From the NCBI RefSeq assembly GCF_016432865.1, contig NC_067399.1:261392001-261456000 (forward strand): 64,000 bases of DNA, given 5' to 3'. This DNA comes from Antechinus flavipes (lineage: Eukaryota). The position numbers were made by a program, and so were the translations under genes. The notes below the pieces were generated by a model. The model did no database searches and was not told the origin of the DNA. It was given only the letters and a program-made list of their open reading frames with translations. Shown here piece by piece: positions 59,472-64,000 of this stretch (position 1 is the first letter of the stretch; each line of letters starts with the position of its first letter).

Positions 59472-61294
59472 AGCTGGGCAGAGAATAGCAATACAAGAAA
59501 GTCAAAAGCTCAGCCTATATATTGTAGGCATCAGCTAGAGAGGTAGAATATCAGACATAACAGGGACATAGAGAGCGACTTTTCATCTGCTAATCTCCAT
59601 GCTCCAGGATATGAAATTGTCCCAGGATATGTGAGCCAAAAGACCAAACTTCAAAGTATTAGGTAATGAAAGAAGAAAACTGTGGCCCAGAAAGCCTCCA
59701 GGATCATTCACTGAGCAGGGAATATAAATTCCAGAAGTATCACACCCTTTTCTTCCCCAAAGCCCTCCTATTATTAGTGAAATGTGCCTGTAGGTGGTAT
59801 TGCCCTGTCTACTTTTCAGACTTTGGCCCTGAGCACTGACCCCTCCACTTGGAGAGAGAAAGACTAGTCTAATGTCCATATTGAAGTGGTGGTTGTTTGC
59901 CCTGTTCTCTAAGATGATCATCACATCAAGAAAGTGATGTCATGACATACAAGTGAATTGGATTTAAATGAGAGGTACAAGGTCACCTGCCTCTCTTTCC
60001 CCTCCAGAACCATCTGGGTACAGTGGCCATATAGTTCAGGACATCTGAACATGGCCCTGGATGCAGTGGAAGACTTTGGCCTTTTAAAGCTAAAGTCTTA
60101 ATCATATTGAGGTAGAGGAAAGTTCAAGGGGAAGATGAAGTAAGGAAAGTACTCACAACCTCAGCTCAGATAACACCTATGAGAACTGTTTAACTCAGGG
60201 AGAGGCAACCTCTCTGAATCTGTTACTTCATCTGTAAAATGAGGATTCTTGGACAAAATAGCTTCTAAGAGCACTATGAATCTTTTTTTTTTTTTTTTTT
60301 GGTTAACATTTTATATATTTAGGAAAAGCAAATTCCCATTCCCACAAATCCTCAAATTTTCAAAAATGTGTCTCTTCTGGCATTTTAAATTTACACTTCC
60401 ATTTCTCTGTCAGAAGGTAAGTGGTGGGTTTCATCTTTAACCTTATGGATTTGTGGCTTACTATAGTGCTGATCAGAGTTCTAAAATCTTTTGAAGTTAC
60501 TTTTCTCTATGATATCACTTTACCTTTTAAATCTATGGATGGGAGAAATTTCAACATTAAACAAGTGATAGGATAACAGAAGATAAAATGGATTTCCCTA
60601 TTTATTGGCTCAACCTACCCATGAACAATGAAAGTTTCTGCACTTACTTTGTGTGCAAGGAATGTTAGGTTGATAGATGGTTCTGAGGACAGCCTGGTAG
60701 AATCACTTTAAAGTATTTTATAGCTTCTGTAGTCATTTTGAATGGAATTTCTCTCTTTAGCTCTTGGTACTGGACTTTGTCAAAAATTTTCAGCGACAGG
60801 GTTTTTATTGTTCATATTATTAAAATTATCTAGTCTTAGTTTTTATTATATTTAGTTGAACCAAATTTGCATTCCTGGGATAAATCTAAGCTGACTCTTT
60901 CTAATATGTTATTGTAGCTTATTGATAAAATTAAAAAAAACATTTTAGCATCAACGTGGTTAGTAAAAGTTGCTCAATCATTCCCATTTGCATATCCCCC
61001 ACTAATCAGCTAGCTGTGTTTCTCAATATAAATTCTTTGCTCTGGTAAATTCAAGTCAATAAATATTTATCATGCGCCTACTATGCACCACGAACTGTGT
61101 GTGTTAAACTAGTAGTTTACAATATAATGGGAGAAGACAGCATACAAAGAAAGCTGAAAAGGGGATAGGGCACTTGGGGGTGGCGGTGGTAAGGTCATGA
61201 CATTCCTGGAGATGAAGTCAGCTGGTGCTGGTGGATGGTGGAAAATGAGATGAAGGATCTCTCCTCTCTTCCATCCCCATTTTATTAAAAAATT

Positions 61295-61310
61295 AAAAAA
61301 AAAAAAAAAA
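61295..61310 (-). terminator. Pol III oligo-T terminator (T16) of RPPH1
   Basis: An A16 run on the plus strand immediately 3' of the RNA. Confidence 0.9.
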
Positions 61311-61311
61311 G

Positions 61312-61661
61312 ATGGGCGGGGGAGAGTAGTCTGAATTGGGTTATGGGATCCTCAAGGAGGTAACCCACCTCAGCCATTGCACTCACTTGGCTGGCCGTGA
61401 GTCGTTTCCAAGCCCAGTCGGGGGAGGCATCCGCCCAGGCCACCTCCCCTGTTCGGGTTGGCGGAACCGCATGGGCATCTCCTGCCCAGTCTACCCCCGA
61501 ACCGGGCCCCATTTTCTGGGAACTCACCCCCCCAAATCGCGGGAGGAGCCCTGCTAGGGCCGCTATTGGCCCTCGTCTCAGACCTTCCCAAGGGCTGGGT
61601 TGAGAGAGTGACGTAGTGCACTCAGCTTGTAGCCCCAACGATGAGCTTCCCTCCGCCCTAC
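61312..61661 (-). ncRNA. RPPH1: RNase P RNA component H1
   Basis: The minus strand starts GTAGGGCGGAGGGAAGCTCATC, contains GGGAAGGTCTGAGAC and AACCCAATTCAGACTAC (conserved regions forming P4), and ends CCGCCCAT followed by oligo-T. Confidence 0.98.
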
Positions 61662-61685
61662 GCAAGAATCCCGCCCGGCGGCCAC

Positions 61686-61773
61686 TATATAAGGCTCACC
61701 AAATCAGTGCTACTTCTTACAGAGGGTGAATATCCCGTGATACTTGGCGACATGCAAATAAGAGCTTACGTCA
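61686..61773 (-). promoter_or_regulatory. Compact type-3 Pol III H1 promoter
   Basis: TATA (TTATATA) at 61686-61692, PSE-like TCACCCTCTGTAAGAAGT at 61712-61729, Staf/ZNF143-like site at 61732-61751, octamer ATTTGCAT at 61752-61759 and CRE-like site at 61766-61773. Confidence 0.85.
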
Positions 61774-61910
61774 GAGTAGAGCACAACTTTCCAGTCTTTC
61801 ATAGCGCGGGAAATCCCGTTTTCTTCAGAGGTCGTAGGTGATAAGCGCATGCGCTGAAGCCAGAGAATGATCCGGGAAGGTGGGCCCGCCTGCATTCGGT
61901 TTAGAGCGCC

Positions 61911-63031
61911 ATGTCCTCTCGCGGCAGAGGTGGAAGCACCGGCTACGCCCGAGGTTCGGAGCAAGTTTCGGGATTCAGGGTTAGAGAATGCTAGAGATTA
62001 GGAAGAGGTGGGGGAACGCCCACCTATCCCCGCTCCTGAGAGGTTTCCGGGAATGCCACAGTCCCGGGCTTGATAATTGGCTAGACAAAGATTGTGGGTC
62101 TTTGTTTGCAGGGTCTTGTCTGGTCCCGGGGTCAGGGGTCAGGGGTCCGGAGGCCGATGTGACGGAGAGGCGGCTCCCCCTCCCATTATTCTCGGCCGAC
62201 TGCGTTTTTGCCCTCGTGTTTATCCGTCTCTTTGATATTTGCCTGGTTGGTTATTTTTTCCACCCCACAACTGGAACAGTCACAGAGTAGATAGTCAAGA
62301 CAAGTCAGCAAGCATTTATTAAGCACCTGCTGCGTACCACACTGCTGAGCACCGGTGATACCCCTACCCCCAGTTGAAAACTGGGTCTCGACGAACAAAA
62401 TGCTTGTGGAATAACTTGGAGATAAGTCATAAACGCTGCTGGCAAGGATCTCAAAGGCCATCGAGTTCAGCTCCTGCATTATATAAATCCCAGAAGTAGA
62501 TCACAGTTATTGGCCCTATCGTCTCCCCGTTAGACTGAGTTTCCCAAGGGGAAACCTGTCAGCACTTGGCACTGTGTCTGGGATATACCAACTCAGCGTT
62601 TATTTAATAAAATGCTTCTTTCACATCCCAAACCAAAAGTGGAAGGGACCTTAGTAACCCCCATACAGATGAGGAAACAGAAGGAAGAAAATACAACGGC
62701 TAGGAATTTTCCTAGGTAGGACATGAACCGCTGTTTTCTGGATTCCAGAACTAGGGCTCAAATCTATAGCATTGGATTCCGGGTTCTTCCCCTTATTACT
62801 CTTCTCGGTCCATCTGGATTCCAATCCTTATTGGAGCACTAGACAAAACTCATGTTCCATTTTTGTTTCGTCTTCAGGTGCAAAGGTAAAGCGGCAGTGC
62901 CCAGAGCCAAAGCCAGGAAAGAGTGAAGTGGCCTCACCAAGCATTGAGTTTCGTTGGCAATGGGAAGACCCCGAGGGTGTCTGGCACTGGTACTCTTCTG
63001 CTCAGGATGTGGAGATCACAGAGGCTTTCAG
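61911..63031 (+). CDS. PARP2: Poly(ADP-ribose) polymerase 2, first two coding exons (partial)
   Basis: Exon 61911-61953 (MSSRGRGGSTGYAR, donor GAG/GTTCGG) splices in frame to 62878-63031 (GAKVKRQCPE...RWQWEDPEGVWHWYSSAQDVEITEAFR, donor AG/GTAAGT). The name comes from the head-to-head position with RPPH1. The catalytic domains lie outside the window. Confidence 0.8.
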
Positions 63032-63569
63032 GTAAGTACTATGCAGAATTTCCTCTCATTTTCTATACCCGAGGTTAAGGGTTTGGTCCAAAGGGATGGT
63101 CCCCTTTCTTATCTCTAGGAGCATGAGAATTGTGTTTTCAGAGACCTGTGCTCCCACTTATACTCTTACTTACACTGAATTGGATTCATCCAGCTTTCTA
63201 TAGTAGAATCACTGACTATAGATATTTAAGAAAACATTACCAGTCTCTAAGTATATCAATCTTAACAGATTCTTAGAAGTTCTTCTACAGGAAAAAATTC
63301 AGTTGGGTATTAATAGAGCAGCTTCCTATTCACATCATCCTGTCAATGTTTCACAGCAACTAGTTCTGTGAGAAGATAAGATTTGTGAGGCAAATCTTTT
63401 GCTTACTGTATTTTAGATTATGCTTGGCTTTTCTCCCATCAATAAATTCTTACACTGGAGAATTAGATATTCTTTTTCCTCTTGCTGTCAGTCCTTTTGG
63501 ATTGACTTTATCATAGGATTTAGTTTGTTTTTCATTTTTAACTCTTTTGACATTATGGAACTTGCAGCA

Positions 63570-64000
63570 ATCTATTGATAAGCATTTATTCAGGGCCTAC
63601 TTTGTGCTAGGCACTATGCTAAGCACTGGGGATTAAAAAAAAAGAAGAAGCAAAAGACTGTCATTTTCTTCAAATAGCCCACAGTCTAACAGACGAGACA
63701 ACACTCATACATATGTACAAACAAGCTATATACAGGGCAGATAAGAAGTAATTTAAAAAGAAGGCATTAAAATTAAACAGACTTGGGTTATGTTTTCTGT
63801 AGAAATTGGGATTTTAGATGGGACTTTAAAAAAGCTAAGGAAATCAGTAGGTAGAGATGAAGAAGGGGATGTTCCAGGCATGAGAGACAGCCTGAGAAAA
63901 TACCTGGAGTTGAGAGATAGAAGGTCTTGTTCTTGCAACAGCGAGAGGCTGGGTCACTGCATCAGGGTATGTGAGGGGAGGGAAGGGGTTGTATAAAGTA
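63570..64000 (-). mobile_element. L2 3' fragment
   Basis: ATAAGCATTTATTCAGGGCCTACTTTGTGCTAGGCACTATGCTAAG is the antisense of an L2 tail. Confidence 0.6.

What the first reader, a model, noticed from the sequence alone, without database searches (positions are those of the whole stretch)
62878..63031. PARP2 exon 2 encodes the first half of a WWE-like domain absent from human PARP2
Seen: RWQWEDPEGVWHWYSSAQDVEITEAF, in frame with exon 1, fits the WWE pattern W-x-W-E-D-x-x-G-x-W-x-x-Y...I-E-x-A. Established: WWE domains bind ADP-ribose (RNF146, Deltex, PARP11-14), and human PARP2 has only a disordered basic N-terminus before WGR. I recall a similar segment in fish PARP2. Inference: marsupials keep an ancestral PAR-reading PARP2 that eutherians lost, which implies a different way of recruiting the enzyme to DNA damage.
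Basis: partly seen in the sequence, partly recalled or inferred. Interest (0 to 1): 0.75.

Follow-up and report, generated by a model that had tools for sequence, protein, structure and literature searches.

The report
Marsupial PARP2 exon with half a WWE domain
A clean coding exon next to the RNase P RNA gene encodes the first half of a WWE (poly-ADP-ribose-reading) domain in what is almost certainly marsupial PARP2. Such a domain was already reported in 2014 for PARP2 of non-mammalian vertebrates, so this adds only the point that eutherians, not all mammals, lost it.

Summary
Window 62878-63031 (+) is an open exon with a pyrimidine tract and AG acceptor and a CAG|gtaagt donor. Its last 26 codons (62952-63029) match positions 2-27 of the 67-position Pfam WWE profile (E 7.4e-4, 20.3 bits, cut-off 21.1). 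The motif occurs once in the six-frame window and in none of 300 shuffles.

The gene is very probably PARP2. A full-length RNase P RNA gene (248.7 bits) lies head-to-head about 250 bp upstream, which is the published PARP2/RPPH1 arrangement, and KLHL33 lies in the same window.

Three things could not be shown: splicing (every run laid was genomic DNA), the second half of the domain, and the WGR and catalytic exons. The last two lie beyond base 64000. Exon 1 is not fixed, because 13 ATG/GT combinations keep the frame.

Perina et al. 2014 (PMC4245714) already reported WWE domains at the N-terminus of PARP2 homologues in "non-mammalian" metazoans, and their only mammals were human and mouse. A marsupial copy moves the inferred loss to the eutherian lineage.

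The "different recruitment" idea is untested. It is also weakened by the finding that the disordered human N-terminus itself binds PAR (PMC6089979). No orthologue could be retrieved with the tools available here.

The parts
61315..61657 (-). RNase P RNA gene (RPPH1 orthologue), head-to-head with the protein-coding gene
   Evidence: Rfam RF00009, 248.7 bits (gathering 28), E 6.4e-76, model 1-301 of 301, not cut off
61686..61759 (-). Compact external pol III promoter of RPPH1 in the shared intergenic region. It holds a TATA-like tatataa at 61686-61692, a PSE-like element at 61710-61729 (minus strand TCACCCTCTGTAAGAAGTAG) and the octamer ATGCAAAT at 61752-61759.
   Evidence: Read directly. The spacing from the RNA 5' end (about 30, 55 and 95-100 nt) fits the type-3 pol III layout known for the human H1 RNA gene. 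The consensus comparison is from my own knowledge and was not tested.
61911..61953 (+). Candidate exon 1 coding part (ATG, 14 codons plus 1 base, donor GAG|gttcgg). It is provisional.
   Evidence: It is in phase with exon 2, but it is one of 13 frame-compatible ATG/GT pairs; ATG 61911 with the donor at 61930 is another. No RNA evidence. It lies in a GC-rich island (GC 0.54-0.56 at 61200-62399 against about 0.35 upstream).
61954..62877 (+). Intron 1 if the exon 1 model holds. It contains a high-copy MIR-like SINE fragment at about 62261-62362.
   Evidence: Genomic contigs run through it without joints. Word depth rises about 100-fold at 62261-62362, with many loose ends.
62878..63031 (+). Coding exon (phase 1 in, phase 2 out). 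Codons 1-24 are a basic, Pro/Lys-rich linker (AKVKRQCPEPKPGK...). Codons 25-50 are the WWE N-terminal half.
   Evidence: There is no stop, no ATG inside, a strong acceptor and a consensus donor.
62952..63029 (+). The WWE N-terminal half itself (RWQWEDPEGVWHWYSSAQDVEITEAF)
   Evidence: Pfam PF02825 profile positions 2-27 of 67. TRIP12 WWE alignment. Only one conservative change (V34I) among three related species.
63032..64000 (+). Start of intron 2. No exon carrying the second half of the domain lies before the window ends. A second MIR-like fragment lies at about 63575-63625.
   Evidence: The ORF list for 63032-64000 shows nothing WWE-like. Sequence read.

Best explanation
This is a genuine internal coding exon (probably exon 2) of the marsupial PARP2 gene, transcribed away from the RNase P RNA gene with which it shares a bidirectional promoter. 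The exon encodes a short basic linker (probably the nuclear-localisation region) followed by the first beta-strands and helix of a WWE domain. The rest of the domain, then WGR, the regulatory helical domain and the ART catalytic domain, should be encoded beyond base 64000.

By analogy with the WWE domains of RNF146, TRIP12 and ZAP, the complete domain most likely binds an ADP-ribose unit of poly(ADP-ribose). It would thereby bring PARP2 to, or activate it on, PAR already laid down by PARP1. In human PARP2 the disordered basic N-terminal region has been shown to do this job.

Shown: exon anatomy, the WWE half-match, and the RNase P RNA and KLHL33 context. Inferred: splicing, completeness of the domain, PARP2 identity of the downstream exons, and PAR binding.
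For: Exon anatomy and open frame. WWE is the only Pfam hit, E 7.4e-4, on exactly the N-terminal 26 of 67 profile positions, ending at the exon border. TRIP12 WWE is the best PDB sequence match. The motif is unique in the window and absent from 300 shuffles. A full RNase P RNA lies 254 bp upstream on the other strand, with TATA, PSE and octamer between the two genes, matching the published PARP2/RNase P bidirectional promoter (PMC11140550). Related species keep the frame and splice sites, with only V34I in the WWE part. Perina 2014 reports WWE at the N-terminus of non-eutherian PARP2 homologues. The aromatic residue that stacks on adenine (RNF146 Y107, ZAP W611; PMC8853533) appears to be the second Trp of RWQW; that alignment is my own and rests on my recollection of the RNF146 sequence.
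Against: The Pfam score is 0.8 bits under the curated cut-off, which is expected for under half a domain. There is no RNA evidence: all four runs laid are genomic, with no joints, and no RNA run is on record. The second half of the domain, holding three of the four AMP-pocket residues (the Y144, Q153 and R163 equivalents), is outside the window. Exon 1 is ambiguous. No PARP2 orthologue carrying this segment could be retrieved. The R110-equivalent position appears to be Pro (alignment from memory). Divergence in the WWE part (1 change in 78 bp) does not differ statistically from the intron rate (about 1.7%), so purifying selection is not demonstrated.
Confidence: 0.8

Rival explanations
1. Relic exon. 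The WWE half-exon is a still-intact remnant that is no longer, or only rarely, spliced into marsupial PARP2 mRNA, so the working protein resembles the eutherian one.
For: There is no RNA evidence for inclusion. Substitution density in the exon among relatives (6 in 154 bp in X4) is not lower than in the introns. Four of the five changes in the linker part are non-synonymous.
Against: The frame is open across 51 codons with a consensus donor CAG|gtaagt and a strong acceptor. No indel or splice-site change appears in three related species. All the WWE signature residues are intact, and the only change there is V to I. The exon also carries the only basic NLS-like stretch seen so far, and it has no ATG of its own.
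Confidence: 0.1
2. The exon belongs to a different WWE-containing gene that sits beside RPPH1 in this lineage, not to PARP2.
For: No WGR or PARP catalytic sequence is visible in the window. The gene order differs from the one I recall for human, where TEP1 lies between KLHL33 and PARP2; here KLHL33 is followed by 25 kb without Pfam hits and then RPPH1.
Against: The RPPH1/PARP2 head-to-head pairing is the published arrangement in mouse and human. PARP2 of other non-eutherian vertebrates is reported to start with WWE. The Arg/Gly-rich start and basic linker resemble the PARP2 N-terminus (my recollection).
Confidence: 0.06
3. The domain is a complete WWE fold in PARP2 but a degenerate one that does not read ADP-ribose. 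It would serve protein-protein contacts or be structural only, as proposed for some WWE domains such as ZAP WWE1.
For: The position equivalent to the phosphate-binding RNF146 R110 appears to be Pro (alignment from memory). ZAP shows that tandem WWE modules can differ in ligand binding (PMC8853533). The pocket residues of the second half are unseen.
Against: The adenine-stacking aromatic and the second conserved Trp are present. The closest solved sequence is TRIP12, described as a PAR-binding WWE (PMC11300803). The human N-terminal region that took its place binds PAR.
Confidence: 0.3
4. A chance WWE-like motif in non-coding DNA.
For: The Pfam score is just below the gathering threshold.
Against: There were 0 motif matches in 300 shuffled windows. 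The match sits in an exon-shaped ORF with consensus splice sites, at the expected place after a CpG-rich bidirectional promoter. The match ends exactly at the donor.
Confidence: 0.02

Closest known systems
WWE-bearing PARP2 homologues of non-mammalian vertebrates (frog, fish; Perina et al. 2014, DNA Repair, PMC4245714, section 3.1.1 and Fig. 1A)
   Same: A WWE domain sits at the N-terminus of the PARP2 orthologue, ahead of the WGR, regulatory and catalytic domains, where human PARP2 has only a basic region.
   Different: Here the host is a mammal (a marsupial). That paper's mammals were human and mouse only, and it called the feature non-mammalian. I could not retrieve those proteins to align them, so orthology of the WWE segment is inferred, not shown.
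Human and mouse PARP2 N-terminal region
   Same: Same gene position: a promoter shared with RNase P RNA and a basic NLS-like stretch near the start. The human region binds PAR and promotes PARP2 activation and branched PAR synthesis (PMC6089979).
   Different: The human region is intrinsically disordered with no WWE fold (PMC11140550; PMC10450202). The marsupial exon encodes canonical WWE signature residues.
TRIP12 WWE domain (PDB 9bkr, 9bks)
   Same: It is the best sequence match among solved structures: WQW.D..G.WH.Y shared over 21 residues. It is described as a PAR-binding WWE of a DNA-damage-linked E3 ligase.
   Different: E is only 0.05, the host protein is different (a HECT E3), and only the first half can be compared.
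RNF146 WWE domain (PDB 3V3L), the prototype iso-ADP-ribose reader
   Same: W/Y-x-W/Y-E...G-x-W...Y...E-x-x-A-F layout. The aromatic at the Y107 position is Trp here, as in ZAP W611.
   Different: No phmmer hit at E up to 10. The R110 equivalent seems to be Pro (alignment from memory). The Y144, Q153, R163 and K175 equivalents are not visible.

Membership tests
WWE domain (Pfam PF02825) | Profile score at or above the curated gathering cut-off (21.1 bits) | tested here: inconclusive
   20.3 bits, E 7.4e-4, from only 26 of 67 profile positions because the exon ends mid-domain. The full domain cannot be scored.
WWE domain (Pfam PF02825) | The conserved Trp, Trp and Glu that give the family its name, in the N-terminal strands and helix | tested here: met
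   RWQWEDPEGVW...VEITEAF is read directly and aligns to TRIP12 WWE at W, W, D, G, W, H and Y. The motif is unique against shuffles.
WWE domain (Pfam PF02825) | C-terminal half of the beta-sheet, with the adenine and phosphate pocket residues (RNF146 Y144, Q153, R163 equivalents) | not testable with these tools
   It lies beyond base 64000. No exon of that kind lies in 63032-64000. Pocket residues are taken from PMC8853533.
WWE domain (Pfam PF02825) | Binding of PAR, iso-ADPr or ADPr | not testable with these tools
   Needs biochemistry.
PARP2 orthologue | Head-to-head arrangement with the RNase P RNA gene through a short bidirectional promoter | tested here: met
   RF00009 at 61315-61657 (-), 248.7 bits. 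The candidate ATG at 61911 is 254 bp away, with TATA, PSE and octamer between the two. Published for mouse and human.
PARP2 orthologue | WGR, helical regulatory and ART catalytic domains downstream | not testable with these tools
   Outside the window. No orthologue or transcript was retrievable.
PARP2 orthologue | Conserved neighbourhood (OSGEP, KLHL33) | tested here: met
KLHL33 BTB, BACK and Kelch exons on the + strand at 29.1-36.3 kb. The order relative to human seems rearranged (human order from memory).
PARP2 orthologue | The exon is included in mature mRNA | tested here: inconclusive
   Only genomic contigs were available and no joints were seen.

The most novel reading that the evidence does not exclude
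Marsupial PARP2 carries a complete, ligand-competent WWE domain. Under this reading the ancestral therian PARP2 was a PAR-reading 'second-wave' polymerase recruited and activated through a folded reader module. Eutherians would then have replaced that module with a disordered basic region that kept PAR binding, which is a fold-to-disorder swap with retained function. The loss would date to the eutherian stem rather than to all mammals, as the 2014 survey implied.
Probability: 0.5. Interest if true: 0.45.

Novelty: new member of a known kind. Interest (0 to 1): 0.3.

Why it matters
PARP2 is a target of PARP-inhibitor drugs, and how it reaches DNA damage is still debated. The human N-terminal region binds PAR without any recognisable fold. 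An intact WWE reader at the same position in a marsupial, as in frog and fish, would suggest that PAR reading by PARP2 is ancestral and that eutherians kept the function while losing the domain. That would give a natural comparison for testing how PAR-dependent PARP2 activation works. The point is modest, for two reasons. The domain architecture was already noted in 2014. The marsupial case is also probably visible in existing automated gene predictions, which I could not reach from here.

Tried and rejected
1. HMMER search of the 50-aa exon peptide against 1.84 billion representatives. It gave 12 hits at E below 1e-3. The eight I scanned against Pfam were multi-repeat Ig/PKD-type surface proteins or had no clear domain, and the weak WWE-profile scores some of them gave were spread over their repeats. 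None was a PARP2 orthologue, so the search was uninformative for so short a query.

2. Word-index search with the 87-aa ORF, scoring residues 37-87. It returned no candidate in the 48-152 aa range. Longer proteins are invisible to that tool at this query length, so this says nothing about full-length orthologues.

3. RNA evidence. The look-up of sequencing runs found no RNA holder. The four runs laid are genomic contigs of this species and two relatives, so splicing could not be tested.

4. Selection test from the relatives' substitutions. There are too few changes to separate the WWE part from the neutral rate.

5. Using frame compatibility to fix exon 1. Rejected as evidence, because 13 ATG/donor pairs fit.

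6. Earlier scan notes searched for PARP, PARP2/WWE and TEP1: none found.

7. Literature search for PARP2 plus WWE plus marsupial, opossum or platypus: no paper holds both PARP2 and WWE together with a marsupial term.

8. Pfam scan of ORFs in 36.5-61.2 kb for TEP1 or other genes: nothing found.

9. Folding the half domain was considered and not run, because half a beta-sheet gives no meaningful model.

10. The joined exon 1 plus exon 2 model was sent to no search tool. The two pieces were concatenated only inside the script, to check frame and stops, and only lengths were printed.

Full report
**What is in the sequence**

Window 62878-63031 on the + strand has the anatomy of an internal coding exon. 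It is preceded by a pyrimidine tract and AG (tcatgttccatttttgtttcgtcttcag|GT) and followed by a consensus donor (CAG|gtaagt). The frame fixed by the surrounding ORF is open throughout. The exon enters in phase 1 and leaves in phase 2, and it contains no ATG, so it needs an upstream start.

**Is it more than chance**

- Against Pfam-A the only hit is WWE (PF02825): E 7.4e-4 and 20.3 bits, against a gathering cut-off of 21.1.
- Peptide residues 25-50 align without a reported break to profile positions 2-27 of 67. Under half of the domain therefore almost reaches the whole-domain threshold, and the match stops exactly at the donor site.
- Among solved structures, the best sequence match is the WWE domain of TRIP12 (9bkr, E 0.05), sharing WQW.D..G.WH.Y.
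- The pattern W.WE[DE]..G.W..Y is found once in the six-frame translation of the 64-kb window, at this place, and never in 300 block-shuffled windows.
- The exon is single copy in genomic read sets, whereas a neighbouring MIR-like fragment in the intron (about 62261-62362) is roughly 100-fold over-represented.

**Which gene**

A complete nuclear RNase P RNA gene lies on the minus strand at 61315-61657 (RF00009, 248.7 bits, model 1-301 of 301). Three elements sit between its 5' end and the candidate start codon at 61911, read:

- a TATA-like element at 61686-61692;
- a PSE-like element at 61710-61729;
- a perfect octamer, ATGCAAAT, at 61752-61759.

This spacing is what I know for the compact type-3 pol III promoter of the human H1 RNA gene. 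The consensus comparison is from my own knowledge. The region is a GC-rich island (0.54-0.56 against about 0.35 upstream).

A bidirectional promoter shared by PARP2 and RNase P RNA is the published arrangement in mouse and human (Ame et al. 2001, as cited in PMC11140550). KLHL33 exons (the BTB_KLHL33, BACK and Kelch families) lie at 29.1-36.3 kb on the + strand. These are PARP2's neighbours in human, though from memory the human order has TEP1 between KLHL33 and PARP2. Here, 25 kb without any Pfam hit separates KLHL33 from RPPH1. I put PARP2 identity at about 0.9. It remains an inference, because no WGR or catalytic exon lies inside the window.

**Exon 1**

An enumeration, however, shows 13 ATG/GT pairs upstream that give an open frame into the exon. 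These include ATG 61911 with the donor at 61930. Frame compatibility is therefore weak evidence, and exon 1 stays provisional.

**Expression and constraint**

- No RNA run holding this stretch is on record.
- The four runs I laid (organisms A, B and C) are genomic. Their contigs run through intron 1 and show no joints. Splicing could therefore not be tested.
- These relatives do show that the exon keeps its frame and both splice sites, with no indel.
- There are six substitutions: V3A, a silent change at R5, C7G, E9G, I22V and V34I. Only the conservative V34I falls in the WWE part.
- With one change in 78 bp, against about 1.7% in the introns, there is no statistical power to claim purifying selection.

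**Orthologues**

I could not retrieve any.

- The exhaustive HMMER search with the 50-residue peptide returned only 12 weak hits. The eight I scanned against Pfam were repeat-rich Ig/PKD-type surface proteins or had no clear domain, and none was a PARP.
- The word-index search is limited to 0.55-1.75 times the query length and found no candidate.

These blanks say nothing about full-length PARP2 proteins of other species.

**What is known**

- Perina et al. 2014 (PMC4245714, section 3.1.1) state that human PARP2 has a basic nucleic-acid-binding N-terminus. [quoted passage not shown] 1A).
- Their vertebrate set contained only human and mouse as mammals. The same paper also says that birds lack PARP2, which is an internal inconsistency.
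- Reviews describe the human N-terminus as intrinsically disordered (PMC11140550). A domain re-annotation based on AlphaFold models says those models add little new knowledge about the domain composition of PARP1-3 (PMC10450202).
- No paper in the library combines PARP2, WWE and a marsupial or monotreme term. No functional work on a WWE-bearing PARP2 surfaced.

The architecture is therefore known. The marsupial instance is new in the searchable literature and moves the inferred loss from mammals to eutherians.

**How it probably works**

In RNF146 the WWE pocket holds the AMP moiety of iso-ADP-ribose through Y107 (stacking), Q153, Y144 and R163. ZAP WWE2 has Trp at the Y107 position (PMC8853533). 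On my alignment, which rests on my recollection of the RNF146 sequence:

- the second Trp of RWQW takes the Y107 position;
- the Trp of GVW takes the W114 position;
- the R110 equivalent is Pro;
- the other three AMP-pocket residues belong to the unseen half.

The most likely function is ADP-ribose or PAR reading that brings PARP2 to PARP1-made PAR or activates it there. This is not necessarily a different logic from human PARP2. The disordered human N-terminal region binds PAR and thereby drives PARP2 activation and branched-chain synthesis (PMC6089979). The more economical reading is that the function was retained while the fold was exchanged. I give about 0.5-0.6 to ligand competence and about 0.3 to a degenerate, non-binding WWE.

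**Verdict**

It is a real WWE half-exon in what is almost certainly PARP2, and the domain is absent from eutherian PARP2 according to the literature.
- Completeness of the domain, splicing and PAR binding are unverified.
- The idea is not new in kind.
- Interest is modest (0.3), as a new member of a known kind.

Noticed in passing
window 61315-61759: A complete RNase P RNA gene (minus strand) with a compact external promoter: TATA-like element at 61686-61692, PSE-like element at 61710-61729, and octamer ATGCAAAT at 61752-61759. An NRF1-like palindrome GCGCATGCGC at about 61846-61855 lies between the octamer and the PARP2 start.
   Followed up: partly
window 29100-61300: KLHL33 exons lie on the + strand (29.1-36.3 kb), followed by about 25 kb with no Pfam-detectable coding ORF before RPPH1/PARP2. 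From memory, TEP1 lies between KLHL33 and PARP2 in human, so the RPPH1-PARP2(-TEP1) block may be inverted in this marsupial relative to human.
   Followed up: partly
window 62261-62362 and about 63575-63625: MIR-like SINE core fragments (…AAGCATTTATT.AG..CCT.CT.TGT…GGCACT.TGCTAAG…) lie in introns 1 and 2. The first shows about 100-fold excess word depth and many loose ends in all four genomic read sets.
   Followed up: no
window 62880-62951: The basic, Pro-rich linker ahead of the WWE half took four non-synonymous and one synonymous change among three closely related species, whereas the WWE part took one conservative change. This hints at a fast-evolving linker, but the numbers are too small to test.
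   Followed up: partly
PMC4245714 (literature): Perina et al. 2014 cite 'bird' among the species whose PARP2 has a WWE domain, yet state elsewhere that no bird genome has a detectable PARP2. Whether birds belong on that list therefore needs re-checking against current annotations.
   Followed up: no
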